Below are positions 22,890 to 41,100 of a stretch of 64,000 nt of DNA, piece after piece (within the stretch, counting starts at the first letter, position 1; each line of letters begins with the position of its first letter). The notes under the pieces were generated by a model. It ran no database searches and was not told the origin of the DNA. It saw nothing but the letters and a program-made list of their open reading frames with translations. This DNA comes from Stylophora pistillata. Its lineage: Eukaryota. The stretch lies in contig NW_019218054.1 in assembly GCF_002571385.2 (NCBI RefSeq), positions 14,012 through 78,011 of the forward strand. Reading direction: 5' to 3'. The position numbers and the translations under genes are program-made.

Positions 22890-25800
22890 ATGGCAGGCAA
22901 GACTGTTCTGACGGCTAATGTAAGTGGGACTATTGATCCAAAAGATGGTGGCAAGGAACCAGAGGTAAGCTGCTTACAATTCCTCCCCAAAATATTTGAT
23001 ACCGCAACAATGAAATTGAAATTCTGATACTTTACGACACAACATGTATTTGTCGTGGTACATTTGTTTACATAGTTTTTTGTCGAAAAGGTATGATCTT
23101 TAAGCCATAAAAGGACCATTCAATAAAAGCAAATAGTGTTCACATTTGAAACTAGAGAAGAGTTCGGCGGTTTAACGCATCGGTTATCGCTTTACGATGA
23201 ATTTCAGAAACTTTTCATAACTGCGATTTTGGGTTGCTGCAATTTTTCTATTAGTAAGTCGTTCTGAATTAAAGTAAAGCTTAAAAGTGAACAATTCTGC
23301 GGCAAACTACTCTCATATATTTTGAAAGGGAGCGTACACGCTAAGATAACAGCTACAATGATTCGCGGAAAACGGGAAGAAGATTTCAAAAGTTATTTAA
23401 AAATATTTGAAAATTTAAGGGTAGTTTGGTACGCCTGCATTTCAACTGAAACGGTACATGCTACGTTATTTGTAAATCTCCACAATTACTGGAAAAAGTT
23501 GTATTTGTGTAATTTTTCGTAAGAATAGTAGTGTTTTACCGTAGCCGTGCAGTAAAGCTGCTTACTCATGCTTCGGATCGAAAGTGGCTACTCACAAGCT
23601 AGTAGTTAATTACTGATTACTAATCAGGAAGTCCGTCACTAAATTGCTCCAACTTACTTACAAAGCGCTGTGATTTACTCACTATGTGAAATAAAGAGGC
23701 TGGCTTGAAAAAAATTAAGATTTCTAATGCTTAACGAACGACTAGCTCTGGGAAAAGGAAATTAGTATGCAAATATGCACACACACTCAAGTGGGCTTAA
23801 TATGGGTCTGATTTCTTCCTTTTGCAGGCCTATAAAATTACTGTTGTTTTCAGCGACGGTACGAAGACTGTTTTACGAAAGAAATACGAAGAATTTGTCG
23901 ACTTGCAGGTAAGTTTAATGATGTTTTCTTAGAATTGCCGGCCCACACACAAACAAACTAACAAAAGCTTCTTTAATTCCATTGTTCACCTAAACCGTGA
24001 AACGTGTACCAGATAGGATAACATTTGCATAGGCATTTGAAGCGAAACGACAAAACCGCTTTTTCGTCTAACCAAAAAAAAAACCGAATCTACTTTTAGT
24101 GACACAGGAAGTCCCAAGTAACCGCATAAGAAATACCGCACATCCGCGTTCATTGTAAGCGAATACGTGGCAGTATTTTTGGAGTTTTCCCTATTAGACT
24201 TGATAATGTTTGAGCGCAAAGGCACTCATCCATTTTATGTACATACATTGGATCAATAATGAATCGAGGCCTCTTTTAAGACCGTTTTTTCCTTGCTTTA
24301 TCGCAAAATAAATCTAACAAATAGCCATTTTAATTTCAAGAATGTAATTGCCCAGCTACCAAAACCACAATCAATCGTTGTTGACATTCGGTCCATAAAC
24401 AAACCCGACTAAGCCCAATACAAACCTCTGATACTCAAGGATTTTATTTGTAGGTTAAGGTGTACGATTTGCTCAAAAAGAAAGGTGGCTACTCTAGAAA
24501 AACATCGAGGACTCTTGTTTCTAGCTTGCCAGGTACGTATGAGTACTCCTTTAGACAAGATAATTGCCTACGTCTGCCGGCAACACATACTCCTGAAAAT
24601 GGTTTTTATCATCGACGAGTGCTTTTCTCATATCAACGGCTTGTTTTGCTGAAATGATGGAGAACAGAAATGTTAACCATTCAAAATCTTTTGCACGACA
24701 GAAAACAACTCAGCACTTTCCAGAATTCTTTTTAAAGACGACTCTTTGAAGAAGATGGGAAGAATCGATGATTTTATGAAGGTAACGATTTCAATTCATC
24801 ATCTTACAAATCTGATGTATTTTGATCATGAATTCCACTTAGTTCGAAACATTACAAAGCCAAGTTCAAAGTTTCACGGCTTATTTTTCTTTTTTTTAAG
24901 GAGCTGTTAACCCTTCCAACATCAGTGAGGGACTCAGAGGCTATAATGATTTTTTTCGGTTCCTTCGAGCAACAAGGAAAGGGAGACAGGTTAGTACCTC
25001 TGTACTGTGAAGCATAAAGTTGGAACGTTTAGAGATAACTATGGATCTTATTTCTTGCAGATCGCGTGAAGAAGAACTAAAGAAAGTGACAAAAGTTGCT
25101 GAAATACCTAGCGGTAAGGATAATAAAAAATTTCCATGGTCCTTTGAGCAAGGAATGTTTTACAACGCATTTACGATCATGAGGGTTTTGACAACTAGCC
25201 TTGTCGTTTTAAAAGAATGAGATATGTGATATTATTTCCGGTAGAGCAATGGATACCACTCCATGAAATCGTTGATTTTACACATAAAATAATTTCTGAT
25301 ATTTGCAGGACGAGATCCACTTTGGAATCTGCCTAATCAAAGTCCAGTGACAAAGCGAAAGTCAACTCAGAATGCCACCTGGATGCCAGAAGATTTGAGT
25401 ATGCTCAGCGAAGAGGCGAGAGCTCATCTTTATCAAAAGCTGAACAGACTTAGCGAAAGGCGACCAAGCAAAGATGTCCCATTACTACCTCTCAGTAAAA
25501 AAAGAGCGGACTCCGTTGATGATGCTGTTCTGGCCAAGCCAAAAGGATCTCCAAGACCAGGCCTGACAAGGAGGCCAATTAGCGTGCCAGTGGGATTGGC
25601 CAGTATGGTCAGGGAAAGCGATGAGATGAAGGAAAACCGTCCAAGCACCCCCAAGCCTTTAAGAGGTAAAGTTCCCTCGCTACAAACTCTCAGTGAATTG
25701 AATGGGCAACACTCTGGGAGTGAAAGCAGCATTTCAGCACTGACGGACACTTCAGCCATCGATTCTGAGTTTTCCGAAGTAGAAGAACCTCGATCAAGAA

Positions 25801-28800
25801 AGATATCAACCCACTCTAGTGTAAGGAGTACTCTGGGCAGAAAGAACCCAAGCAAGAAAAAATATGTTGCCACCTCAACATTCGTTGCTGAAGAAACTGG
25901 TGAAGTTTCACTGGAAGAGGGCGAAGAAATCGAGGTCGTGCAGAAAGAATCCAGTGGTTGGTGGTACGTTAAAAATGACTTTGTTGAAGGATGGGCTCCG
26001 GAGGCATTTCTTGCACCATCTCAAGGATCAAGGTCTTCATCTCCCGAGTCCCAGGTCCCATCCCAGAGTTGGGACACCCAAGATCAATCAATTGAAATTA
26101 GGCCAAGGATGGAATCCCTTACAGAGAGACCAGATGTAAAAGAAGAGGAGAAAGTTGTACCCCAAGCAAAAGTAAAAGTAAGTAAACGTCGAATTCACGA
26201 ATTTCAAAGGCTTCTGCTTATCATATCTTATTCAGGTTTTCTTTAGTATATCTTGTATAGCAAAACTGTCAAGCGAAAATACACATTTGATGTTTGTCAA
26301 AATTTTATTTCTATGCTAGTTCCTTTCTTCTCCTTCGTTTAGTGAAAAGAATGCGATTTAAAAAAGGCAAAGTTATGAGTCTATTTACCAAACAGACGTT
26401 TTTCCTGCTTTCCTGCTTGCACGAGAGTAGACGTAATTGAGTTGTCAATTATCACGCAGGATGCAAGTGTTCAGCTTCAGGCTTCATTGACTAACTTCAA
26501 TGAAAGAGAAAAGCCTGAGTATCGTACCAAATCATCGATCAATGATTGTCAGGACTTTGAAGTCATAATATAGAACACAATGGCTGCCATAACTTACTTG
26601 TAAAAGATAGATGTTTCCATGAAATACAGTCGTTAGAACTGATGCGTTTGAAGGTTATATGAACAAGAAGTTCATAAGACCGCTCAGTGATTAAAACAAA
26701 TTGAACACTCTAGTTGTGTTAGCTTTGAACTAGCAACGGTCGCGACGTCGGTAAATTAAACAATAAACATACTAAAAATGACTTAGCACTTGAGACGCGG
26801 TTAGTGGTCGTAGATTACATAACACCATTGACGCCATTTCCGTATCACTGCGAGGTGACGCTGTACAATGACAGCGCGGTCGACGCTCATTAAAAGCTTT
26901 TGTACTTTCCATTTTCTAGTCTTTGGAACGTCCCGAGGAAAGAGGTTCTCAAAAGAAGCACATAGAAATGAATCGACGACCCAAATTTCTAACTATTGAG
27001 GGAATCCAGAAACGGAAAAACCCAGACAAAAACTACGTAAGTGTCTGTTTTTGTCTTTCAGCTGTATTAGTTATTTTTCATCATTTTTAAACCAGAATTA
27101 TAAAATGATACCACAGATATCATAACAGACCGATGGGAATTCAAAAATAAATAACACTTTGCAAGATTTTGTTGTAATAAGAGGCAAGAAGTCTACCTGA
27201 GTATGATAGACTCAAAGACGGAAGTAAATCAATGTGAAAACTTCACTTACTACAAATTGCCTGTCGAGAATACCACTCTGGGTTTCAACCTGCATTTCAG
27301 AGATGACATACTTCTGTGATTTCAACTATACAGCATAATATCAAATGAAAATGTCTCAGATTTCTTAAACTTTTCTTTTTATCAACTGTTAACTACAAAA
27401 CTACCGAATACGAATACTACAATTAGAAACTCTCTAGAATCCCAGAAACCAAACATTTCCTACAATCAACGATATAACAATCTTGCGTGCAAAAATATGC
27501 CCAGGACAGACAGCGAAAAAACCCTCAGCTTCAGTGATGTTCAAAAACAATAACGAGACATGATAATAAATATGGATGTGGCTTTGGCGGTAACGCTAGA
27601 ACGTCGCTACTTTCTTTTACGGAAAAAATGAATAAACAAAGTAACACGCAATGTCTGCGGGCTTTCCTTGCCAGGTTTACATCCTCAAAGTGGTTTGGTC
27701 AGACGGAAACATCAATATCGTTTACAGAACTTGCAGCGATTTTTTCTTTCTTCAGGTAAGGCGACAAGGGATAAGGGCACCTTTACAGATTTGTTTTTTT
27801 TTTTTTTATTGTTTTCATTGTTACGGCTTATCTATATTGTTGGTGTGAGTCAATAAAGATATTGCCTCTGTGTGGGCTCTCTCGAACAAAACCTTTACGC
27901 AAGTCACTGTGTGGTTTTATAAACGAAGCGCGGACCAATATATCAACTACGTCGTTGAATTCTTTTAATACCTTGCTAGTAAACAAATTAAGTGAGTTGA
28001 AATATTGCCATGTCATCACACATGAGCCATCAACTCGACGTCAAATAATTGGTTAGCTTGGCAGGTCAAGACTCGCGTGTTGGGTAAGGCGGAGGGGCAC
28101 GTGATGGGCACGTGATGTCAGTCTAGAGGTTATACAGCTGTTCACTAAATAACATTCAGCGAAAAATCTGCGTTTGTAAACTCACGAGGAATCATTTGGA
28201 AACAAAAGAGAAAACAAACCATTCAGAACCTAAAGATCTTTTTTGTTTATTTGAGATAAAGGTGTTAACGTTTGGCGTCTTTTCAACAAAGCGTTGTATA
28301 ACAAGGAAAAAAAGATGACAAATAGAAAGAGCGAAAAGTGCATTAAGTGCTTTATTTGTATTTGTTTCAAAACACATCTCAAGATTGGCTTTCCAGTTTA
28401 TTGATCTACAGGGGGTCACTTGGAAAAATGAGTTTTGGCAACTTTTGTAATTCAATACTCTATGTTTTGCTTTTGAATTTTCTTAGGAAAATCTCAGAAA
28501 GGAATGTCCAAGTGCCATTGGAAAGGAAATTCCTGCTTTGAAAGGTAAACTTGAACTGTTTATAAAAATCCAAACTCCAATCCTTTCTGCATAACTATGA
28601 TAAAATCCAAAAAAATCCAAAAATCCAATCCTTTCTGGTGGTATACCAAGAGGCGAAGATCTTTTCACTGAATCATTTCCGTGGCCTGACTTCTATTCAA
28701 GTTAGCTCTTTCGACTCGAAGGTTATGCGCCTCGATGAAAATTTGGGGAGAATAATACGTAATGTTATCTACTCCTAACGTTTCAGAACAGTACATAAAA

Positions 28801-31800
28801 TTCATGTTTAAAAAAAAAATATAGGTTTACAAAGAAACGTTTTAAAACTCAAAAGTATTGCGTGCGTGAGATCTGAGGAATGTTTTATGATCTACTATGA
28901 AGCAAATACAAGTAATAAGTCCATCAGAGCATGACTGGAATTTTAATATATATCTAAATTTTTGTTGTTCTTTTTGTATGCATTGCAGGAAGAAAATTCA
29001 CCGAGAACTGCCAGTTCTGCTTCAAGGATGGAACATGCAAGAGACAAAAATTCATGAACCAGTTTTGCCATGTAAGTAAAAAGCTTTTCATTGCAATTAC
29101 CAATATCTTCTGAAAAGACCTTTGCCGCGTAAAACAGACACTGGATTGTTCTAACAATTTTTCTCTTGCCCTCTTTTAGGAACTGGTGAATGCACCCGAC
29201 CACATCTCTAGAAGCAAGGTTGTCATGGATTTTTGCAGGTCTCGACCTAGCGATGTGCTTCCTCATGGAGAGTGAGTAATATTTTTTGTTTCTTCTGGTG
29301 AAATGATTTTTATCATAGTTATGCAGAAATTAAAATAACTTGATAGATCAAATAAATCTGTTGTTTTTTAAACAGTTTTTCATTTTGAAAGTTTCGCTTG
29401 AATATTGAATTGGTAAATAACATTTCTTCCACCTTTTATCTACCATTAGGGTTGGAAAGAAGGATGGAAAGTCTACGGGCGGTAAGTAAAGTCAACTAAA
29501 TCTAATTTGTCAGAAATACGCAATTAATTGATTAGAAGTTAAATCACGCATTTGTTAATAATTTCAGATGACGACGAGAACGTCCAGATCTCTGGTCCAG
29601 TGGTTTTTGAACAATATGAAGTAATATGCGATTATAAGAAAAAGAACAAGAATGACATTTCCCTACCAGCTGGAGATGTCGTTGACGTCATAGAGAAGAA
29701 TGATTACGGTGAGTAACTTGGAATTTTGAAGACTTTTTTTTGCCCATTAACATCCTCGTTTTAGTAAATATTCTTCCAAACACTCTTGAAACCCTCTTCA
29801 AATCATACGCGAACCCGGCATCCGCATCTCTTCTTTTTTTCCAACGTTTTTGTCCAGTCTTTTACGCGTTCTCCTTCACCTTATTCTCTAACGGATCAAT
29901 TATTTGATCTCCTTTTCAAGGCTGGTGGCTTGTTGATCGTGATGGAGAGTTAGGGTGGGCTCCTGCTTCTCATCTTGAGCCCACAGATGATGGGGCTGAG
30001 GTAACCTCAGCAAAACACTTTGCACCAGGGAAAGGTAGGTTGAAATAGTTGGAATAGATCTCTTGCCATGAACATTTCTGAAATTTCGTGCATCAGAAGA
30101 ACAACGGAGATACCTTTTTCAGCTATCCAAACTGTTGTGATAACATTTTGAATACGTAAAGTTAAATTTTCATTTGTATAATGTGTGGATTCGAAGATTT
30201 TTATAAGGATTATAAAGCAATGTTAATAGAGTCATCAGATGCGAGCTATGATCCACGCCATAAACAATGCACATGTCATTCCACCCATAAACAATGTGCA
30301 GCTGTAGTAACATCTGAATAGGGACCTTAAGAAACCACGACGGCGACGGCAACGAGGACGTAGAAAAACAAGAGATCTAATTGGCAGAACAATAGCTCAG
30401 CAGTGAGTTTTGAAACTTTATACATTTCTTAGCCGTCCTATGCAAAACAACACCGTGAAATCGCCAAAATTTGCGTCGTCTGCAAACCGAAACCGCGACG
30501 GCAAATTATCTTAATTTCCATTTGGAACTCAACGGCTACTTTATACGTCATTCTGAAGTTGAGCTGTGGCGCTGTATGAGATAGTAAGCTCCTGCAGCCA
30601 TTTTTGAAATTCTAACTAAGAGTAGAAATTCATTTTTTAATCGAAGTCTTCCTTGGCGTCGCCGTCGTGGTTTCTTAAGGTCCCCATTAACTTAGCTCAA
30701 ACTCCGTCTAAACTCTCCACGACTATTAAGCTGTCTCCTTCAACGTGTAAGTGTTTGATTGTTAAGCCAACCCATGTTTTGTGCATCAGATGAGATGTTA
30801 ATCAGGAAATTCTTAGAATTCTGAAAAAGGAACGAAAAAAAAGGTAAAAATCCTAAGCTGAAATATACGTTTTTGTCCAACAGAGGAGATCTACGTGTCA
30901 ATTAAACGTTATCAAGCTACAGCTGCGGACGAATTGTCTTTTGATGCTGATGTTATGTTAAAGGTGGTTGAGAAGACCTTGGACGGATGGTGGCTCGTAA
31001 GGTATTCCACAAATAAGAATTTCTAAAGATCTTCTTTCAGCCCGTACAGTTGAATATTTTTTAATTTTTAACTTCAGTGGAACGGGTAATGAATTGTACA
31101 TTATAATAATTTGTGTTACCAGGTATCAGGGTGAAGAAGGATGGGCACCTGCCATGCATCTGAAAAGAGTGAACTCAGACGACTCAGTAAATGCAGAAGA
31201 CAGCACTTTGGATCAATTAAACATCGTCTCCAACGATGACGGTACAATTGAGTTACCAAGTGTTTTTCTTTAAGATATGATATATTTCAATTTACAAAGC
31301 AACCAGGTGGATAATCGAAAAGGGTTTGATGCTACTCTGATTTAATAAATGTAACCGAGGAATTATACTTCATTGACCCAACGTTTCGACACTCCTGTCT
31401 AGTACCTTCATCAGGGGTAATCTAATCGTTGCATTAAGAGGTCCTTTTTCTTTCATGTGATCGATGATTTTTTTTTCATTTTAAACGTCGTCGTAGAAAA
31501 ACAATTCTTCTAGGTTCCCAGAAAAAGGCAAATCAATGACCTTTCAGCTCGTGCTCGCTGGGATCGACCAGTGAGCCATGGGAGGTTGATAAAGCATTAT
31601 CTTAAAACATTAACTACAAACTGCCAGTTTAGAGAGAATAATACCAAAACCCGAGCTCATAAAACTTCATTTAGCCTGATGAAGTAGTTTCCATTCATTA
31701 AGATACTGTTTCCAGAAGTTTAAGCCTTGAAATAAATGCGAAAACCTTTCAACACGAGTTAATATGTCTGATGAAATTTTCATTTCTTTATAATAGAGTC

Positions 31801-33193
31801 TACCAATGACGAAGGCCCGGTAATCCCACGCGGCGCTCCTACACGGCGAAGTCAGGTGAGTCAGGCTTAAGATGATTGCTGTTGACTAAGAGCCTCTGCG
31901 AAAATCATTTTTATTATCACTATTTCAACTTTGCCGATAATAAAGAGCCTGACAGTCCCATAAGTGAGGGAAGCCAAGGAAAACTAATACTATCCGCGCT
32001 TCGCTTTGTTATGGAAAAAGCTTTTCACTCATCTTTACCAGGTTCTCCCGCATCAAAAATCTTTTCCTCCTTGCACGGAAAGTAATTAAATGAACAGACA
32101 GTGATATAACTAAAGTAAATATATGTTGGATAGCCTCTTCTTTGGTAACTATGCCCTTCAAGGGAAGAAAAACCTTTGATTTAAATACGACAAGGGTCGA
32201 AGTAAAAGAGAAAGGATGACGATTCCCAGTTTAAGAAAGACAAAATGTTTCAAAAGAAATGTAAGTAAATATTAGCCCAAAAAACATTCTAATCCCTATC
32301 TTTTGCAGGTCCAAAAAACAGGAAGATTTAGACAGAAGAAAAATTCCCATGACCTTAATGGAGTTCCAGAGGAAGACAACAGTGCCGAAAAAGCCACAGA
32401 AGAAAAGCCATCTCTGTCAGCACAAGTAAATCCCCCTCCTCTGACGAAAAGGATTTCGGGAAAAAACTTGTCTCTCCCAAGGTCACCCTCCAGACCACAC
32501 TCCGGCGAGCTTCCTCACGGAGACGTGACTCGCCAGTTCTCCATTTCAAGCAGTGGATACGAAAGTTCTCCAACTGGCAGCCTTACTTCCCTCGTGTCTG
32601 ACGTTTTTCCCGAGGATACTTCGTCGCCAAAGGGTGGTGTGAAGAGGTGCGCAACACTACCTCAGTTTGACCACATTCAAGCCCAGATTATGCCATCCAC
32701 GCAAAACTCTCCAGAGATACCACGATCTCGATCTGTAACTTCTATGGCACAATACAAAAAAGAATTAGAATTGAGTCTCAATGGTATCCAATCAAATGTC
32801 AGAAAGCCCAGCTCGGGAAGAAGCAGCCCTGTTTCCACCCCGAGAAAGATTTCTGCATCGAATAGATTGAGTCCACTAGCTTCTTCGCCCTCCAGAAATC
32901 GGGAGTTTGGATCTGCATCGCCTCAAAGGTTGTCTCCGAGAGACTCCATTTCTACGGTTGACGATGACGACTATCAAAGCAGCAATTCTGAACGTAAAAA
33001 TGGGGATCAAAGTGAATCAAGGGTATATAAAGCTATTTATACATACATCGCTCAAGAAGATGGCGAGGTTAGCCTTATCGAAGGAGATGACGTTGAAGTA
33101 ATTGAGATGAGTGAAAATGGTTGGTGGCTCGTTCGAACCTCCGAAGAACTTGGATGGGGACCTTCCAATTTTCTACAACTGACGGCATGTTGA
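22890..33193 (+). CDS. Double-PX, four-SH3 scaffold protein (NCF1/p47phox- and SH3PXD2/Tks-like NADPH oxidase organizer), about 1074 aa, 19 coding exons
   Basis: Exons: 22890-22964, 23828-23908, 24454-24532, 24702-24781, 24901-24989 (PX1); 25061-25113; 25309-26177 (Ser-rich + SH3); 26920-27036, 27675-27755, 28487-28544, 28989-29071, 29180-29271 (PX2); 29450-29481; 29568-29708, 29921-30034 (SH3A); 30884-31001, 31123-31241 (SH3B); 31797-31855; 32309-33193 (Ser/Pro-rich + SH3). All GT-AG, phase-consistent, total 3225 nt with no internal stop. Motifs: GIQKRKNPDKNYVYILKVVWSDG, ISGPVVFEQY, KNDYGWW, KTLDGWW. An in-frame TAA lies upstream of the ATG. Confidence 0.85.
30321..30684. mobile_element. MITE with about 27-bp TIRs in an intron of the double-PX gene
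   Basis: Left gggaccttaagaaaccacgacggcgac and right gtcgccgtcgtggtttcttaaggtccc are perfect reverse complements. Confidence 0.85.
31373..31421 (-). ncRNA. Minimal type I hammerhead ribozyme-like motif (Penelope-like element remnant)
   Basis: Minus strand reads ACCC-CUGAUGA-A-GGUACU-agacagg-AGUGUC-GAAACGUU-GGGU: core boxes CUGAUGA and GAAA, 6-bp stem II, ACCC/GGGU stem I, palindromic AACGUU in place of stem III. Confidence 0.6.
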
Positions 33194-35130
33194 GCTCTAG
33201 CAACTCAAGCGCAAAAAAAATGAACAGGAAGTGTTAGAACTTTACCAGCAAATGGGTCACACGCACAAACCGTCGTAAAAGAACTATAACTGGGTAAATT
33301 TCAAACATCTGTGCTCTTTGCTGGAACCTGGGTGTGTAATCTTGCACAAGGCTTATTGCCAAATACAGTACGCCATACCAAAAGTTAATAAGTTCTAATA
33401 AATTAACCTTGATCGGGGGCAAAGTGGAGGAAATAAGGCGCAAGCTTTTGACGCAGTTTTTCCTGAGTACTATTCTTATTTTCCCGTCTCCTATTGTTCC
33501 AATTGTTAAGTCTATTCTACATCTGACTTTGCTTCTAAAATTTAAAAATCATGCTAGTACACTAAAAGGTATTCTTAAGTATTTTGTAAAATATATGAGT
33601 AATCATTAAAAGTTCGCGTGTTAGATTTTAAGGTCATATATCACATAGAGAAACCAAAGTTATTCCAAAAAAAGGTTTTTTTGCCTATCTATTCTTTACA
33701 GATCACAGTTAGAGCGATAAATGTTGATTGAGAAACAGATTTAAACTGTAGGCTACGTCATTACTAGCTTTAGAATCTAGTTAATCGTCTAACGCGTCCA
33801 TTGTAAAGAAAAAAAGCACTAGAGCAGAGATATCAGCAAGTAAAGATTGTACAAAACATAAGTCGTAAATACCCATTTAATTTCAGCAACGCAAGCTTAA
33901 CAATATGCGTTTATAAAAATATTACTTGACGAATTACTTTTTTAAGGTAATTAACGGTCTTTTAACTGTTGTAACTTTTGATTAATAAAATGACATTGTA
34001 TTATGAAAGAAACTACCAAAACTTTTCTTGCTAGTTTGATTCTAGTTTGAAAAATTTTAGTGCTATAACACATCCGTTAAGTAACAAAGTCAACTGAAGG
34101 GAGGCCAAATTGAAATAGTCTTGATCTGTTTTTTCAATTACTTACTCCAGTTCCTGATAAGCGAAAATTAAGTCAATATATGAAACAAATGCTATCTTTG
34201 GTAGAACGCTTTATATACTAGCAGCTTTCATTCTCACCAAAAGAAGAAAAGAAAAAAATCTCTCTCTTCATTCCCTCCTATAATAGGAGAAAGAAACGAG
34301 AAGGAGAAAAATATGTACCGGAGAAGTGAAAGAAAACTACGATAGCGAATCCTCATTATATATTGTATTCCAAAGGCAACCTCCCTCAAGTTAATTTCGA
34401 CTCGAGATATTTTGCATCTCCAGAATAAAGTACTAGCAGCGTGCGTATTGCTGGAATGCTTCGGTGGAGAACAACCAGCCGCTGCATGAGATGCCCACAC
34501 GAGCGAACCATGCGACACGAAATTGGCCATTTCTAGATTTTCCTAGGATTTTTTGAAAAGCTGCTCTACTTATGTCAGATTTTACTTAAATGAGCAAAAA
34601 TCGCTCTTAGCTCAGGCCTGAATATGAGATCCACACATTCAGAGGATTAGAGAGAGGCAAACACACTGATGCTCGGAATAGCAACTCTGCAGCCTCCTCG
34701 CCTAAGGAATTGGCAGATAATCCTGATATGGGAATCGCTAGTTCTCGGGCTTTCCCAACTTGGTACTTTCAATATGTAATCGTTGTCGAAAAGTACTTTT
34801 TCAGTGATCAGTGAAATTTTTTTGCCTTACTGAGTCCCCCAACATTGACTTGAAACCTACGTTTTGGTGGACACTAGCAATGACATAAGGGTGAAACGTC
34901 GGTTCACTATAGGGAATCCTACCCGAAAATCCATTCTCTACCAAACTACAGACCCTCTCTCAAAAAAACTGTCTCGAACATTGAATAAAGAAACAAAAAA
35001 ATATAATTAGAATCAATAACAAAAACGCTATAGTTTAAGAACAGTCTACTATTCACAAGTGGTCTCTTCGTGTGTTTAAGATATACCAATGTTTGGCCTG
35101 AATAGGCAGTTCTTTTTTCGATCTGACTTT

Positions 35131-38100
35131 TCAACGTGAGAATTCGATATCTTCGTCATCGTTGAATTCTTCCAAGTAATTTGAGGGGGCCCAACCCACC
35201 TCGCCTTGCTCATTTTGTATAAACCACCATCCGCTTTCACTCTTGCGCAATATGGGTAAATATTCTCCACTCTGTAGGTCTATCTCTTGGCTGTCGAGAT
35301 CTCCTTTGTAATCTTCAACTGCACGACAAGACATCTGGAGTGTGCCTTCTTCTTCTTCTTCGAAATCTTTTTGTTGCAAAGTGCATTCTGTTTCTCCGTT
35401 GACTTGAGGAGCAGGACAAAGTACGCTGGACGATAACCAACCTTTCATTCCTCCTTTATTCTTGACCAACCAGAATCCTGTGGATGCTTTGTCTAAAACT
35501 TGGACATATTCACCTTTAGAGAGGCGCATTTCATCGTCAACTTCGCAGTCTTCAATCACAAGATAGATATTAATTGAAAGGTCATCCTCATCTCCTGTAA
35601 CGTTTACTTGGATTTCAAAGCTTTCTGTGGAGCGAATGCTACCATCAAGGCTCATTCTCTCATCGTGGTCAAGAACTTCTTCTGTTTCATCTCCTCTAAC
35701 GATTGGCTCTCCTGTTTCATCAACCACAATTGCAGGTGAGTGGCTGGTTTTATGATGCAGAACCACTGTGTTGAACGACATTTGCGCCAGCTCGGGATCT
35801 GATTCGTCGTCACTCGAGCTCCACTTCTGGATGTCATCATTAAGCTCCTCTGACTTCTCTTTGTCTATCCCCGCTTGACGCATGAGTTTTCCACTTGGTG
35901 AAGGAGGAACCCTTCTAGGAGCTGCAGTCCGAGGGGATTCGTATCCTGAGGGAACTGGCGGTGGCCTCATCGGTGAATTAAGTCTTGGAGAGTCTTCGCT
36001 TAAAGAAATTGTTTTGAAGTGCCTCGATGAATCAAGAGGTACCTCGAAATTTATCGGTGTATCGGACACACTTTCGGGACTCTCTGCATTTTCGGTGGTT
36101 GTAGCACTATCATTTCTTCCATCAGAATAGTTAATGTTGTTATCGTCACCGTTGAGGTCATGCTGCAAGTTACCGGTGTCATTCTCGTTCCCACTTGCGG
36201 AGTTTGAGTCTTGTGGAGACAGATCGTTGAGATCATTTTCTGACTCTTCTGTTTCTGTATTTTCAGTGCCATTTGGATTTGATTCTGGTATCTCGTTGAT
36301 CTCTGGCATTTCACTTGTCTCCACACTTCGACTCTGGGAAATCTCCATGGACCGGTCGTCATTGGTTGGTGGCTCGGGTGCCTCCTCAACGCTGTGCAAA
36401 GACGACATTAAGGACGAAAGTGATGTTTTCATACCTGATGTTTCTTCGCTTGCTTTCGCTTTCTGCTTTTTGTTTCGTTTATTCAATTGCAAAAAATCAG
36501 AACCCTCAACAACTGCACCATTAGAATCTCCATTGTCTTGTACACCAGCAAACCTCAGTTTAGTTTTCTGTCAACAACAAAAACAAAAAGGATATAGTCA
36601 CATTACATCACATGCAATCAGGCAAAAACATAAAAACCCTCTACCGAAATCAACATCAGCGCTTGTCATTCTGCTAAGTGTTCCTCAGCAATAACAAATT
36701 CTTTGCGTTTAAAGTTGTCTCTTTCCGTCTTATTTTAGTTCACTTTATCAATAATTGTCTTGACTCAATTTACCCCCCACCCCTCCCCCACTGCAGCTAT
36801 CCATAAATCAACATGTGAGAGCTATGATGGTTTTTGCCTTCCTTTTCCTTCATTTTACTTAAAGGTCCGGTAATACGGGCAACATTTTTCTTCAACTTGT
36901 CTTGCAACATTGTTGCATTGCAAGTTGAAACCCTATGTTGCGCGTATTACCACGTTCGTGACCAACTTGTCTCGCAGCATAATATAGTGTTGCAAATTCG
37001 CGGAATCCTGCCCGTATGATTGGTCAGTCGTATGTAAACAAAGATGGCGGCTGCTGAACTCTTTCTTTGTCGGAAGAGAGCGCTTGCAGCTCTCTCTGTT
37101 TGGGCCTTTTGCTCGGTGAAGACGAGGAATTGTCTCGAAAACGAAATCGGAAATTTTACATGCAACAATGGATTTCCCGGAGAGAGGAGAGAGGCGTCTT
37201 TCACCAGCTAATTAGAGAGCTTGAAGTGGGGGATGTCGTGGCGTACAGAGAGCTTTTCCGTATGACGAAGGAGCAATTTTCCTTTCTGTTGGGAAAAGTA
37301 TCCCCGCTGATCCAAAAGAAAGAGCAGCCATCACCCATCAATTCTGTCCGGGCGACAATACAGCCAGATGAACGCCTAGCTGTAACGCTACGGTATTTGG
37401 CAACGGGAGAAACTTACCATTCCTTCGAGTACTCGTTCAGAATTTCAAGCCAAACAATTTCTTCAATCGTGTCAGAAACAAGCCGTGCCCTGTACAAGGT
37501 AAGCAGGTCTTGAAATCGTTGGTTTATTTATATAACAGCGTCGAAATTAACATTCTTGACATACATTTTAATTTCCTATACTACAGGTACTTGCTCCAGA
37601 ATATCCAAAAGTACCAAACACAGAAAGTGAATGGGACGCAATGGCGGACAAACTGGAGGCAAGATGGAATTTTCCGAATGGTATTGGCGCTATAAACGGA
37701 AAACGTGTCATAGTTCAGCAGCCATCTAATTCTGGCTCTTATTATTACGATTACAAAGGGAACAACAGCATTGTTCTCCTTGCTGTGTTTGGGCCTGACT
37801 ACCAGTGCCTTTGGGCGAGTGCTGGAACAAATGGTCGTTCGCCAGACTCTGCCATATGGCAAAATTGTGACCTGAAAGAGGCACTGAGTTTAAGTCACAA
37901 CACTTTGAATTTACCAAAGCCTAGACCCTTGCCAGAGAGAGTAATGCCAGTACCATATGTCCTAACGGGAGACGATGTCTTTGCCTTGACAAGATTTATG
38001 ATGAAGCTTTTCCCACTGGCAGGATTGTCAAGAGCAGAGCAGATTTTCAATTACAGGTTGTCGCGCATGCGGAGAAGCTCAGAAAATTGTTTTGGTATCA

Positions 38101-41100
38101 TGCTGAACAGATGGAGGGTGTTTCGTGCTCCAATTCTCTTGTCTCCGGACACAGTCGTCGACTTGATTTTGGTAGCACTAGTGCTGCATAATTTTCTAAG
38201 GTAGGGCTATAAAATCAAGTGGTACAAACCATTATTCCTTCGTTGTGAATATCGGTAGCTAAAAATGAAAACAACTTAATGCTACCCAAAATAGCATTTA
38301 TAAACAGTGTATCAGTTTGCATTCATCTACTCTACCTAAAAGCAATAAGTACTATACCTAAAAACAATATGTTGTTTTTCTAGATGACCAGTATGTAGAA
38401 TCACAAGCTTTAAATGAAAGCCGCGACTCCACTGTATTAATCTGATGCAAAAAAAGGATTTTACTTGCACTTGGTGGCATCAAATCTCTTGCCACGCAGA
38501 CATTCAATTCAATCTAGACCCAATCATGCAGACTTCATCCTTGTGCAGTCTGGTTTTATCACACACACCATTTTTGTTATTTCTTAAAGCCTGCATTAAC
38601 ACGATTATCATTCCCTGCTAGCAGAGGCTCTTTTCCAGGAAAAAAGCCTCTACTAGCAGGGAAGATCATCGGATTTAGTTGACAAACAAAGAATCATGAG
38701 TGCTCCCTTACCTAAATATATCCTGGGGGATACTCAAAGTATACATGAAGGAGGGGTCTGACTTTTTTGGGGTGTTGAAAATTTACATTTTCAGTATTTT
38801 TGTTGGCTGAAGAGAACTGTCGCGTAATTTTTTAGATCCTAAAAAAATGTGTATTTTTTTGGGTCACATCTCTAAGAGAACTTTTCGTTGCGATCAGTGG
38901 ATCACAATAATATTCGTTTGAACTTTTTTTCAGCGACATTAACAGACATACCAATTTAATTAGCCTATTGATGCATAATCATGGATTAAATAGTTCTGTT
39001 TGAAAGTATAAATCAGTATTGAGGTATTTAAGTCTTGTATTTTTTGGGGTAGGATACTTTGATGCCAGGTATTTTTTTGGGTCTAAAATTTCAGTTTCAC
39101 GTATTTTTTTGGCTTTGCAATATGAATACTTCAAGAGTCCATTTTTTTAATTAACAGTAACTTATTACAAATAAGACCTTAAGGTCCTTATAAGCGTGTA
39201 CCTTTTCAATAAGGTACTTACTGAAATAGTGTAATCTTTATGCAAGAGTGTAGATTTGAAACTTTGTCTTACAGGAAATGGACTTTACATCATGCTATTT
39301 ATAAAGTTATTAAGATATAATAAATATGAGTATGGTCTGATAAAAAACCATAATGATTTATTTAAATAACTTTAACTTATTTGAAATGAGATTTTTAAGA
39401 TCCTCAAGTATCAGTGTACCATTTTAAAAAGGTACTTTAATTTTAATGAAATATTATATGTTTGTAAACCATTCATCTTACAAGAAATGGACATTTACAT
39501 CATTTAAATTATGAAGGAATAATACAAATATGTTTTGATAAAATGTCAGTAATAGCTTTATTACTAGAAATGACTTCATTTTGAAGGGTAATTTTAAATA
39601 AGATTTGCCAGCACATTTCCATTTCTTCAGTACTTAAATTTCTGGCTTATTAGCTACATGTAGGATACTAAACTTTGAAAACCTACTTAACAGACCCACA
39701 GGGATTGCTAAATTACTCTTACAACAGATGTTAACCTCCACGTTAATTCGTCCCAGGCAGTGCTGAAAAATTAAATTGACTGCAAAAGGTTAAAATTGAC
39801 AGTGGAGAAAATTGAAATTCAGTGACCACAGAAGGTTGAAATTTAGTGATTTTTTTCATATTTTGACAACTTAAAGGTAAATGAAAAAAATTTAAAGTAT
39901 TTGCAGGCTTGAAAGGCACAAAATAACATTTGAAATTAGGTTATAAATGTGTTACAAATGTATAATCAGGTTATAAAGGTGTAGTGTCAATGTAAATAAG
40001 TCCAGTTTAAGGTGTCTTTGTTGAAATTGAATGCTGATCGATGCTTGTGGGTTGTCTAAGAGGTCTGTAGACTGAGAACTGCTCGCAGATACAGGTGTGG
40101 ATTGTGGTGCAAAGCATACCATTTCCAAATCAAAAATAACATCGTTGATTCTTTTCTTAGCAATAGCCAGGTGGCGACCAATTAAACTGTCGTAATGAAG
40201 ACTCCAACGATTTTACAAAGGTACTGATGGAATCGTTACGATTTTCCACATTTGGCTGACCAATTGCAAGTGGCAGAGGGGTCTGCAGGCACTTAATAGC
40301 TTCTTTGTAAAGATCCAGTTTTACCTTATACAATAATAATAACAGTGATTGACAATTACTTACGAAAGTGACGGTGAATAGTGAACATCACTCTGCCTCG
40401 ATGCGTCACAAAAGTACAATAAATGAAACGCGTATAGCTACCTCTTCAATATCTTTCGCCTTCTCAGCTTTAATTTTCTTTGCCGGTCTCTCATTTTCCG
40501 TAGGATCAAGTGTTGAAATAGCAGGGTCGACGTCGTCACTCCCCTTGATAAACATCAAAGATTTCAAATATCTCCACTGCGATGTGTATACGCCGACCCT
40601 ACCGGTTCCACTGACCTTGCTGTCTTCTTTTTTAACCTCTCGGCTAAAAAAGGTCTTGAGCACATTCCACCGACTTTTAATGTCATCGTGGCTTCTACCA
40701 GAGAGAAGGTCGGATAGCTTTGTGTAGCTTAGTTCCTTCAAGTCTCTGTCCCGGTAGGATGAGAGGCTGTGATTCCATAGGATGTCATTTTGTTGATAGT
40801 ACTCTATCAACTGCTCTGTCTCGTTCTCCGTCCACTCATTTTCTTCTTTTGCCGCCCTTAGCGAAGGAAGAACGTCTTCTTTCATGTAACTTAACGAGTC
40901 GAAGAACTTCCACCTGGACTTCTGCCGGTCACTTTCCTTCTTAATTTCCCGTGCCAAGGCAGTCCGCACAGTATGAAGTTGTCGTTTTAGGTAACCTGGC
41001 GATAAGTTATACTTTTCTGACAGTTCCTCTAAGCCTTTCTCCTTTTGCTGCTTGTTTTGCTGCTTGTTTTTTGAATGGACATACGATGTGTCCCACATAC

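What the first reader, a model, noticed from the sequence alone, without database searches (positions are those of the whole stretch)
31797..32350. p47phox-type autoinhibitory motif RGAPTRRS on its own 59-nt exon
Seen in sequence: right after SH3B a small exon encodes ESTNDEGPVIPRGAPTRRSQ, followed by basic VQKTGRFRQKKNS. Established knowledge: human p47phox has RGAPPRRSS followed by a polybasic stretch, the autoinhibitory region that fills the tandem-SH3 groove and is released by PKC phosphorylation of Ser303/304. Inference: a phospho-switch of the phagocyte-oxidase type is present in this invertebrate protein, even though it also carries an extra Tks-like C-terminal SH3. This bears on when p47phox autoinhibition evolved.
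Basis: partly seen in the sequence, partly recalled or inferred. Interest (0 to 1): 0.75.

Follow-up and report, generated by a model that had tools for sequence, protein, structure and literature searches.

The report
Coral organizer protein's SH3-lock mini-exon
A real, expressed 59-base exon of a stony-coral scaffold protein encodes the short proline-arginine motif that relatives such as human p47phox use to hold themselves shut, but this motif is a family-wide feature reported in invertebrates since 2007, so the find is solid yet ordinary.

Summary
Exon 31797-31855 has AG/GT borders. The gene is already annotated as Stylophora pistillata XP_022796983.1 (1074 aa). Its layout is PX-SH3-PX-SH3A-SH3B-[mini-exon]-SH3C.

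The core P-T-R-R-S is invariant in 13 of 13 coral mini-exons compared, and is also present in annotated Acropora and Montipora proteins. It fits the published loose tandem-SH3-binding motif. SH3A and SH3B keep the GWW and D-E signatures needed to bind it.

The motif is not specific to p47phox. In 38 of 42 family members aligned, x-P-[PT]-R-[RKQ] sits at the same place after SH3B. These include choanoflagellates, a sponge, Hydra, jellyfish, hemichordates, Tks4/5 and manta p47phox. A 2007 paper already described AIR-like regions in Nematostella, Lottia, sea urchin and Monosiga. The finding therefore does not move the date of autoinhibition.

The match of "RGAP" to human is partly coincidence, because other corals read RT[PT]P. 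Pfam's NCF1 PBR/AIR model does not hit the coral proteins.

Binding and phospho-release remain inferred; the structure predictor was closed. I class this as a new member of a known kind, of modest interest.

The parts
22890..26243 (+). Upstream half of the same gene: first PX domain exons and a large exon holding an extra SH3 (SH3-0)
   Evidence: Collinear with the public protein P0334 (XP_022796983.1, S. pistillata, 1074 aa) from residue 1 at 22890 and with cDNA contigs L013/L018. Pfam SH3 hit on 25293-26243.
26920..29271 (+). Second PX domain, exons ending about 27045, then 27675-27755, 28487-28544, 28989-29071, 29180-29271
   Evidence: Spliced joints. Exon translations. The loose end before 27675 matches the exon ending near 27045. 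Pfam PX hits on orthologues P0330 and L013/L018 at the matching residues.
29450..29481 (+). 32-nt linker exon
   Evidence: Joints 29271>29450 and 29481>29568; translation.
29568..30034 (+). SH3A (exons 29568-29708 and 29921-30034) with the GWW triplet across the junction, PASHL at its end, and the acidic inter-SH3 linker
   Evidence: Pfam SH3 hits; joints; junction codon GGC = G followed by WW.
30884..31241 (+). SH3B (exons 30884-31001 and 31123-31241) with D-E in AADELSF, GWW, and the start of an acidic linker
   Evidence: Pfam SH3 hit; joints; translation.
31797..31855 (+). 59-nt mini-exon encoding (E)STNDEGPVIPRGAPTRRSQ
   Evidence: AG/GT borders. Spliced on both sides in 3 contig runs and in raw reads. 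A homologous mini-exon is present in 12 of 18 coral loci.
31835..31855 (+). Motif A-P-T-R-R-S-Q, the loose tandem-SH3-binding pattern; residues 774-780 of P0334
   Evidence: Regex hit; motif definition; P, T, R, R, S invariant in 13 of 13 rows; position in P0334.
32309..32350 (+). Basic stretch VQKTGRFRQKKNSH at the start of the last exon, with a conserved Ser in [KR]NS
   Evidence: In alignment A3, all 11 rows that cover this part read V[QR]..., basic residues and [KR]NS. RNA polymorphism T>A at 32327 (F to I).
32309..33193 (+). Last exon: Ser/Pro-rich linker, C-terminal SH3C (about 33029-33178), stop codon
   Evidence: Pfam SH3 at residues 252-297 of ORF 32276-33190. 100% identical to P0334 residues 780-1074. 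34 homologues found.

Best explanation
The 59-nt exon is a constitutive coding exon of a Stylophora pistillata gene for a p47phox-related organizer/scaffold protein with the layout PX1-SH3-PX2-SH3A-SH3B-[mini-exon]-SH3C. It encodes the coral version (A/P-P-T-R-R-S) of the proline-arginine motif that nearly every member of this family carries just after its tandem SH3 pair.

Shown here: the exon is transcribed and spliced. The motif core is invariant across stony corals. The motif sits at the homologous place in the family. The tandem SH3 pair keeps the residues known to hold such a motif.

Inferred: the motif folds back as a polyproline-II helix into the groove formed jointly by SH3A and SH3B, keeping the protein closed so that the groove, and probably a PX domain, are unavailable. 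Because position 3 is Thr rather than Pro, the lock is probably weak, like the VPTRP motif of NOXO1.

More weakly inferred: opening occurs by phosphorylation of the invariant Ser right after the core and of serines in the basic stretch that follows, as in p47phox.
For: Exon and splicing. The public annotation XP_022796983.1 contains exactly this peptide.

Motif fit: A-P-T-R-R-S-Q matches [PAVIL]P[PTAV]R[RP][^DE][^DE] (section 3.2 of PMC12730246).

Conservation within corals:
- R, P, T, R, R and S are invariant in 13 of 13 rows (the window plus 12 metagenome or cDNA loci), while the preceding acidic part varies.
- The same core is present in the 3 Acropora and 2 Montipora RefSeq proteins looked at.
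- The donor site lies at the same place, two codons after R-R, in all 10 genomic loci.

Family-wide homology:
- 38 of 42 aligned family members have x-P-[PT]-R-[RKQ] in these columns.
- The canonical Tks-like gene of the same genome carries VPPRKAS on its own 53-nt mini-exon with the same intron phases.

Binding apparatus (signatures listed):
- GWW is present in both SH3 domains and D-E in SH3B.
- The coral SH3A-linker-SH3B aligns to human p47phox tandem SH3 (1UEC, 1NG2, 7YXW; E 4e-29 to 8e-27) with only a 2-residue difference in linker length.

Possible switch:
- Position 6 is Ser in 13 of 13 coral rows. Acid or phospho-Ser at this position weakens binding in p47phox.
- [KR]NS at the start of the last exon is conserved in the 11 of 15 A3 rows that cover it.

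A p22phox gene exists in the same genome.
Against:
- The motif fails the strong definition: position 3 is Thr.
- The aromatic residue of the SH3A P-x-x-aromatic-L signature, which contacts motif position 3, is His in the coral clade (PASHL). In the 42-row alignment (A4) it is Tyr or Phe in 39 rows, His in the two coral rows and Cys in one.
- The linker from SH3B to the motif is about 37 residues, against about 10 in p47phox.
- In Tks4 the homologous motif binds, but a phosphomimic next to it changed nothing, so a phospho-switch does not follow from the motif.
- Pfam NCF1_PBR_AIR (PF16621) hits manta p47phox at 78 bits but none of the four coral proteins scanned: L013, L018, P0330 and P0332.
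- The tail of the coral p22phox reads PPPRG, which fails position 5 of the motif, so the p47phox-type target is not evident.
- One relative (P0016, a cluster of 111 members) reads IPRTPATTQS, with both Arg lost.
- The minus-strand paralogues in the window show no such motif.
- Four of 18 loci have upstream DNA but no detectable mini-exon.
Confidence: 0.6

Rival explanations
1. Tks4-type lock without a phospho-switch. The motif binds SH3A-SH3B, but the closed state also needs a further SH3 (SH3C or the upstream SH3) packed on a PX domain. It is opened by partner binding or lipid rather than by serine phosphorylation.
For: - The protein has SH3C after the motif, as Tks4 has its third SH3.
- In Tks4 both the proline-rich region and the third SH3 are needed for autoinhibition, and T353E had almost no effect (passages of PMC8348221).
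- The 2007 paper places early-animal p47phox-like genes nearer to SH3PXD2 than to vertebrate p47phox.
- NCBI names the protein 'SH3 and PX domain-containing protein 2A-like'.
Against: Vertebrate Tks4/5 carry an acid at position 6 (13 of the 14 vertebrate Tks rows). The corals carry an invariant Ser followed by a basic stretch, which is closer to the p47phox arrangement. Nothing here tests either mode.
Confidence: 0.25
2. The motif does not engage the tandem SH3 pair. It is a docking site for another SH3 domain (SH3C, the upstream SH3, or a partner protein), or simply a basophilic-kinase site in a disordered linker.
For: - The protein has four SH3 domains, and single SH3 domains also bind P-x-x-R-type ligands (general knowledge, recalled).
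- Position 3 is Thr and the SH3A pocket residue is His, both departures from the strong tandem-SH3 pairing.
- The long 37-residue linker would allow other partners.
Against: The motif position is homologous to one that is experimentally bound by the tandem SH3 in p47phox and Tks4. The GWW, GWW and D-E signatures specific to tandem SH3 binding are intact.
Confidence: 0.1
3. Chance resemblance: a basic, proline-containing patch in a low-complexity linker, with no function.
For: A single loose-motif match in the six-frame translation of the window is what shuffles give (mean 1.52). The 'RGA' part of the match to human is not shared by other corals, which read RT[PT]P.
Against: - Only 0.018 matches are expected in the linker itself.
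- The core is invariant in 13 of 13 coral rows while its surroundings vary.
- The motif is kept in Acropora, Montipora and Stylophora, and 38 of 42 family members carry it at the same place.
- The exon borders are conserved.
Confidence: 0.03

Closest known systems
Autoinhibitory region (AIR) of p47phox/NCF1: core RGAPPRRSS, residues 296-304; structures 1NG2 and 1UEC; Pfam PF16621 NCF1_PBR_AIR
   Same: - The motif lies just after SH3B.
- The core is x-P-x-R-R followed by Ser and then a basic stretch containing serines.
- The tandem SH3 pair has GWW twice and D-E.
- The inter-SH3 linker is of nearly the same length.
   Different: - Position 3 is Thr, not Pro.
- The linker from SH3B to the motif is about 37 residues rather than about 10.
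- PF16621 does not hit.
- There is no p47_phox_C region. The protein has two PX domains, an upstream SH3 and a C-terminal SH3.
- The tree does not join it to manta p47phox; the backbone is unresolved.
- Phosphorylation is untested.
Autoregulatory PPPRR motif (PTAM) of Tks4 (residues 346-350) and Tks5 (400-404), ahead of their third SH3
   Same: The order is the same: PX, SH3A, SH3B, motif, further SH3. The columns are homologous in the family alignment.
   Different: Vertebrate Tks4/5 have Pro at position 3 and an acid at position 6; the coral has Thr and Ser. Tks4/5 have one PX domain and 4-5 SH3 domains in a different arrangement.
C-terminal VPTRP autoregulatory motif of NOXO1 (weak binder, Kd about 50 uM)
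   Same: Thr at motif position 3. It fits only the loose motif definition.
   Different: The NOXO1 motif lies at the far C-terminus and has Pro at position 5. The coral motif lies right after SH3B and has Arg.
AIR-like / polybasic regions of invertebrate and choanoflagellate p47phox-like proteins (Kawahara and Lambeth 2007, PMC2121648)
   Same: The same inference was made there for Nematostella, Lottia, sea urchin and Monosiga: PX, bis-SH3, an AIR-like or polybasic region, and extra SH3 domains in the cnidarian protein.
   Different: That paper describes one-PX proteins. I could not see its figure 9C or additional files, so I cannot say whether the P-x-R-R core was pointed out. The coral gene here is a separate two-PX paralogue, distinct from the canonical Tks-like gene of the same genome.

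Membership tests
p47phox-related organizer family (PX + tandem SH3) | PX domain N-terminal to two adjacent SH3 domains | tested here: met
   Pfam PX and SH3 hits on P0330, P0332, L013 and L018. Window exons are 100% identical, within exon bounds, to P0334. The window's single PX exons alone were too short for Pfam.
p47phox-related organizer family (PX + tandem SH3) | GWW triplet in both SH3 domains (needed for tandem packing) | tested here: met
   SH3A reads ...DY-G-WWLV across the junction and SH3B reads LDGWWLV. The signature is defined.
p47phox-related organizer family (PX + tandem SH3) | Short acidic linker of preserved length between the two SH3 domains | tested here: met
   The coral orthologue aligns to human p47phox across SH3A-linker-SH3B with a single 2-residue gap.
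p47phox-related organizer family (PX + tandem SH3) | Double acidic residues in the second SH3 (C-[DE][DE]) | tested here: met
   AADELSF in the window. D-E is present in all 42 aligned rows.
p47phox-related organizer family (PX + tandem SH3) | [quoted passage not shown] | tested here: inconclusive
   The window and the coral clade read PASHL, with His at the aromatic position. Of the 42 A4 rows, 39 have Tyr or Phe, the two coral rows have His and one has Cys.
Tandem-SH3-binding motif, strong form [PAVIL]PPR[PR][^DE][^DE] | Pro at position 3 | tested here: not met
   Position 3 is Thr in 13 of 13 coral rows. Definition.
Tandem-SH3-binding motif, loose form [PAVIL]P[PTAV]R[RP][^DE][^DE] | Whole pattern | tested here: met
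   APTRRSQ. PPTRRSM/K in most other corals. L013 reads TPTRRSM, which fails position 1.
Tandem-SH3-binding motif | Actual binding in the joint groove of SH3A and SH3B | not testable with these tools
p47phox (NCF1) proper | Match to Pfam PF16621 NCF1_PBR_AIR | tested here: not met
   Manta NCF1 (P0169) scores 78.3 bits. There is no hit on L013 or L018 at E up to 0.01, or on P0330 or P0332 at E up to 0.1.
p47phox (NCF1) proper | Architecture PX-SH3-SH3-AIR-PRR/C-tail (PF08944), with no further SH3 | tested here: not met
   Two PX matches and four SH3 matches, and no PF08944 hit.
p47phox (NCF1) proper | Groups with vertebrate p47phox in a tree | tested here: inconclusive
   Quick tree on 136 tandem-SH3 columns. 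The coral pair sits on a long stem in an unresolved comb. Manta p47phox and amphioxus join as long branches with support 44.
p47phox (NCF1) proper | Release by phosphorylation of serines next to the core | not testable with these tools
   Only the presence of an invariant Ser at position 6 and of [KR]NS is shown.
Tks4/Tks5 (SH3PXD2B/A) | PPPRR followed by an acidic residue, ahead of a third SH3; single PX; 4-5 SH3 domains | tested here: not met
   The coral has PTRRS with Ser at position 6 and two PX domains. 13 of the 14 vertebrate Tks rows have E or D at position 6. The order 'motif before a further SH3' is shared.

The most novel reading that the evidence does not exclude
In the stony-coral two-PX clade the lock may be a co-adapted weak variant. 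An invariant Thr sits inside the polyproline core (position 3), and His replaces the aromatic pocket residue of SH3A that contacts that position. The Thr itself, flanked by Arg-Arg, could be the phospho-acceptor, so the switch would act inside the core rather than beside it. With two PX domains, the one motif might gate two membrane-binding modules.
Probability: 0.12. Interest if true: 0.5.

Novelty: new member of a known kind. Interest (0 to 1): 0.3.

Why it matters
If the motif does lock the tandem SH3 pair, stony corals would regulate this scaffold as human phagocytes regulate p47phox. Coral superoxide production is linked to immunity and bleaching, so this regulation could matter there. 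However, the motif occurs throughout the family, down to choanoflagellates, and an AIR-like region in cnidarians was reported in 2007. This instance therefore confirms the ancient origin of the mechanism rather than re-dating it. Its main use is practical. It gives a well-defined, RNA-supported and conserved peptide (residues about 765-795 of XP_022796983.1) and a natural Thr-3 variant for binding studies. It also flags a scleractinian two-PX paralogue whose function is unknown.

Tried and rejected
1. The first protein search used a wrong frame (my slip). I corrected it at the same tool.

2. Alignment A1 placed the last exon under the N-terminus and SH3A. I dropped it for A2.

3. The search with A2 was flooded by vertebrate Tks5. 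It returned the canonical anthozoan Tks-like proteins but not the orthologues of the window's gene. Those came later from the metagenome scan and from the search with the L013 ORF.

4. The search of representatives with the last exon gave mostly generic SH3 proteins. It was useful only for the Hydra, jellyfish, hemichordate, amphioxus and choanoflagellate family members.

5. I considered and rejected this idea: 'the ancestral state is p47phox-like (Ser/Thr at position 6), and vertebrate Tks4/5 fixed an acid there as a built-in phosphomimic'. The two Salpingoeca proteins also read PPPRRES, so the polarity cannot be called.

6. I considered and did not support a co-variation of Thr-3 with His in SH3A. 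One non-coral row (P0145) has Thr-3 with Tyr, and the coral clade counts as a single event.

7. The tree did not resolve where the coral clade sits.

8. The tail of p22phox did not give a clean partner motif (PPPRG).

9. The literature searches found no paper on a coral two-PX organizer or on this motif in corals. Figure 9C and additional files 7-8 of PMC2121648, and figures S1/S6 of PMC12730246, may bear on how much was already shown.


Full report
**What is there**

The stretch 31797-32350 holds a 59-nt exon (31797-31855), an intron, and the start of the last exon (32309 onward). The exon is flanked by ...ataatAG| and |GTGAGT. I mapped 11 exons between 27675 and 33193. All have AG acceptors, and the ten internal donors are GT. 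Translated exon by exon, the frames run on without stops:
- SH3A is split over 29568-29708 and 29921-30034.
- SH3B is split over 30884-31001 and 31123-31241.
- The mini-exon gives STNDEGPVIPRGAPTRRSQ, preceded by the junction codon GAG = E.
- The last exon starts VQKTGRFRQKKNSHDLNG and ends in a third SH3 and a stop codon.

They were handled exon by exon, and natural cDNA contigs and public proteins stood in for the joined product.

**Is it transcribed?**

Yes. One call of read laying on 27400-33300 (5,901 letters) used three poly-A RNA contig sets from three studies (X5, X6, X9) and raw stranded reads (X24). It gave ten GT..AG joints that match the exon map.
- The joint into the mini-exon (31241|31797) is carried by one contig in each of the three contig runs and by 106 raw reads starting at 48 places.
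- The joint out of it (31855|32309) is carried by one contig each and by 58 reads at 34 starts.
- No joint that skips the mini-exon is listed (threshold 3 reads).
- X24 depth is 34 in the bin with the exon, against 1.6 and 0.8 in the neighbouring intron bins.

Contigs cannot show rare isoforms, so low-level skipping is not excluded.

**Which gene and organism?**

- The last exon finds 34 coral ORFs, one of them named Desmophyllum pertusum.
- A contig of the window's own assembly encodes residues 333-758 of the protein named SH3 and PX domain-containing protein 2A-like isoform X2 [Stylophora pistillata] at 100% identity.
- The window's exons match XP_022796983.1, SH3 and PX domain-containing protein 2A-like [Stylophora pistillata], 1074 aa (P0334). 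Identity is 100% within exon bounds, from residue 1 at 22890 to residue 1074 at 33190.

The genome is therefore S. pistillata or something nearly identical, and the gene model, mini-exon included, is already in RefSeq.

Pfam on the close relative P0330 and on P0332 gives two PX matches and four SH3 matches. Two metatranscriptome contigs from other corals (L013, L018) carry the whole arrangement in one open reading frame. The protein is PX1-SH3-PX2-SH3A-SH3B-[mini-exon]-SH3C. It is a conserved single gene, not an assembly accident.

**Is the motif conserved?**

A scan of metagenome contigs with the last-exon alignment gave 18 coral loci.
- Twelve loci (L004-L010, L013-L016, L018) carry a homologous mini-exon. 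In the ten genomic loci it lies 257-713 nt upstream of the last exon and ends ...RRS-ATG|GTGAG. In the two cDNA contigs it is spliced straight onto VQR....
- Aligned with the window (13 rows, six distinct peptide variants), R11, P14, T15, R16, R17 and S18 are invariant, while the acidic N-terminal part varies.
- RefSeq proteins of three Acropora and two Montipora species read KRTPPTRRS[MK]VQKSI[RK]RKPK. The motif therefore spans both major stony-coral lineages; that grouping is recalled, not tested.

Results against conservation:
- Two loci have no upstream DNA.
- Four loci (L002, L011, L012, L017, with 3,855, 3,637, 841 and 2,762 nt upstream) show no mini-exon and no SH3B exon either. I cannot tell whether these are longer introns or other paralogues.
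- One relative (P0016, a cluster of 111 members) reads IPRTPATTQS, with both arginines gone.
- The paralogues on the minus strand of the window show no such motif by pattern search.
P0330 and P0331 share them, while other corals read R-T-P or R-T-T.

**Chance**

One loose-motif match in the six-frame translation of the whole window is what base shuffles give (mean 1.52). In the 293-residue linker between SH3B and SH3C only 0.018 are expected. The argument rests on place and conservation.

**What the motif is, against published definitions**

I read sections 3.2-3.4 of PMC12730246 in full. [quoted passage not shown] The Thr variant at position 3 is known from the weakly binding NOXO1 motif VPTRP.

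The window's A-P-T-R-R-S-Q fits the loose form only.

The same paper lists the domain signatures for joint binding. Their state in the window is:
- GWW in both SH3 domains: present.
- A double acid in the second SH3: present.
- P-x-x-aromatic-L at the end of the first SH3: reads PASHL, with His at the aromatic place, as in the other coral rows.

The coral SH3A-linker-SH3B aligns to the human p47phox tandem SH3 structures (1UEC, 1WLP, 1NG2, 7YXW, 8WEJ; E 4e-29 to 2e-26) with a single 2-residue gap in the linker. The alignment stops before the motif, because the coral linker from SH3B to the motif is about 37 residues.

**Family-wide view**

I aligned 42 family members. In 38 of them x-P-[PT]-R-[RKQ] sits in the same columns after SH3B:

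| Group | Motif |
|---|---|
| Jellyfish | PPRR[RK][ST] |
| Hydra | PPRR[TN]S |
| Anthozoan canonical Tks-like proteins | [VL]PPR[KQ][SA]S |
| Hemichordates | PPPRRG[TS] |
| A sponge | LPPRRQS |
| Manta p47phox | PPPRRST |
| Vertebrate Tks4/5 | PPPRR plus acid (13 of 14 rows) |
| Two Salpingoeca choanoflagellates | PPPRRES |

The four exceptions are amphioxus P0036, Actinostola P0212 (a gap), and the Clytia-type proteins P0233 and P0044 (T-A-P-R-K).

In the same coral genome the canonical Tks-like gene has its VPPRKAS on a 53-nt mini-exon. It has the same intron phases, and its donor also lies two codons after the basic pair. The 'own small exon' is therefore an inherited feature of the family in this genome, not a peculiarity of this gene.

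**What is already in print**

- PMC2121648 (2007; passages, and section 13 in full) reports that Ciona and sea-urchin p47phox proteins possess an AIR-like region. It also reports an AIR-like region in Lottia, a polybasic 'prototype of the AIR' in the Nematostella protein together with multiple SH3 domains, and an AIR-like region with a PKC-type serine in Monosiga. It places these genes nearer to SH3PXD2 than to vertebrate p47phox.
- PMC8348221 (passages only) gives the human AIR as RGAPPRRSSI (296-305). It shows that the PPPRR of Tks4 binds its tandem SH3, while T353E changes little.
- PMC7663256 (passages only) says the autoinhibitory elements are conserved in Tks4/5.
- PMC12730246 limits its conservation analysis to chordates.
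- My three literature searches listed nothing on this coral gene.

The specific coral instance, its Thr-3 and its two-PX setting are not, as far as these searches reach.

**Membership**

- It is not p47phox proper. Pfam PF16621 (NCF1 PBR/AIR) hits manta NCF1 at 78 bits but none of four coral proteins. There is no p47phox C-tail, and the architecture differs.
- A quick tree on 136 tandem-SH3 columns leaves the coral pair on a long stem in an unresolved comb.
- It is not a typical Tks4/5 either: position 6 is Ser, there are two PX domains, and the SH3 layout differs.

**Context**

The genome has a p22phox gene (Pfam PF05038, 53.6 bits against a cut-off of 25). Its tail reads ...KQPPPRGPRSQS.... 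It has the P-P-P-R core but Gly at position 5, so a p47phox-style target is possible but not evident.

**Mechanism and odds**

Most likely (0.6), the motif is the coral copy of the family's autoregulatory ligand and folds back into the SH3A/SH3B groove as a weak lock.
- The homology and the intact binding signatures are shown.
- The binding itself is inferred.
- A phospho-switch on Ser779 and the [KR]NS serine is plausible by analogy with p47phox. That RRS-x-x-x-K and KKNS resemble basophilic-kinase sites is recalled, not tested. The Tks4 result warns against assuming it.

Rivals are a Tks4-type lock without a phospho-switch (0.25), a ligand for another SH3 domain or merely a kinase site (0.1), and chance (0.03).

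**Limits**

- The look-up of encoding contigs and structure prediction were closed, so there is no structural model and fold search was not used.
- Supplements and figures were not available.
- The metagenome loci carry no species names, and several may be paralogues or alleles of one another. '13 of 13' counts sequences, not independent lineages. The named RefSeq proteins give six species in three genera: Stylophora, Acropora and Montipora.

**Verdict**

This is a new member of a known kind, of modest interest (0.3).

Noticed in passing
window 22890-33193 (+): The gene is a two-PX protein: PX1-SH3-PX2-SH3A-SH3B-motif-SH3C, 1074 aa. It is annotated as XP_022796983.1 and conserved as one ORF in cDNA contigs L013/L018 and in Acropora and Montipora RefSeq proteins of 1077-1081 aa. 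With the L013 ORF as query, no protein outside stony corals reached E 1e-30 (5 hits).
   Followed up: partly
window 58816-53787 (-) and 51141-42325 (-), plus SH3 exons at 35577-35134 (-): Two further paralogous PX/SH3A/SH3B gene copies lie on the opposite strand of the same window. Pattern searches found no P-x-R-R motif after their SH3B. Whether they are expressed or intact was not tested.
   Followed up: partly
window 30158-30748 (inside the intron 30035-30883): RNA contig depth jumps to thousands here (up to about 32,000 in X6), with reads on both strands, many loose ends at 30317-30320 and 30684, and fixed differences from the window. This looks like an abundant repeated element transcribed elsewhere in the genome.
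   Followed up: no
window 32327: T>A in RNA (64 of 75 X24 reads; contigs of X5 and X6) changes F to I in the basic stretch (VQKTGRF/IRQK). The I form is also that of the relatives P0001 and P0330.
   Followed up: no
L021 8323-8271 (-) = own genome C261: The canonical Tks-like gene of the same genome (100% identical to the S. pistillata protein P0206 over residues 333-758) carries its VPPRKAS motif on a 53-nt mini-exon with the same intron phases as the window's 59-nt exon.
   Followed up: yes
L001 1695-1455 (-) = own genome C438:122800-122994: The last exon of p22phox is present. Its tail reads ...SEPPKQPPPRGPRSQSLDN..., that is a P-P-P-R core followed by Gly rather than Pro or Arg.
   Followed up: partly
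window 31825-31839 and 31838-31852 (+): The same stretch of DNA spells P-T-R-R-S in two overlapping reading frames, a short near-repeat of ACGCGGCG / ACACGGCGA. Splicing fixes the frame that is used, so this is a curiosity only.
   Followed up: no
window 37058-38201 (+): Two long ORFs (151 and 210 aa) look to me like a PIF/Harbinger-type transposase. This is recalled from the look of the sequence and was not scanned against any library.
   Followed up: no
P0091, P0162 (Salpingoeca rosetta, S. infusionum): After PPPRRES the choanoflagellate proteins continue ...SIHG[ED]. This is much like manta p47phox (PPPRRSTIRNAKSIHGT), so more of the AIR than the core may predate animals.
   Followed up: no
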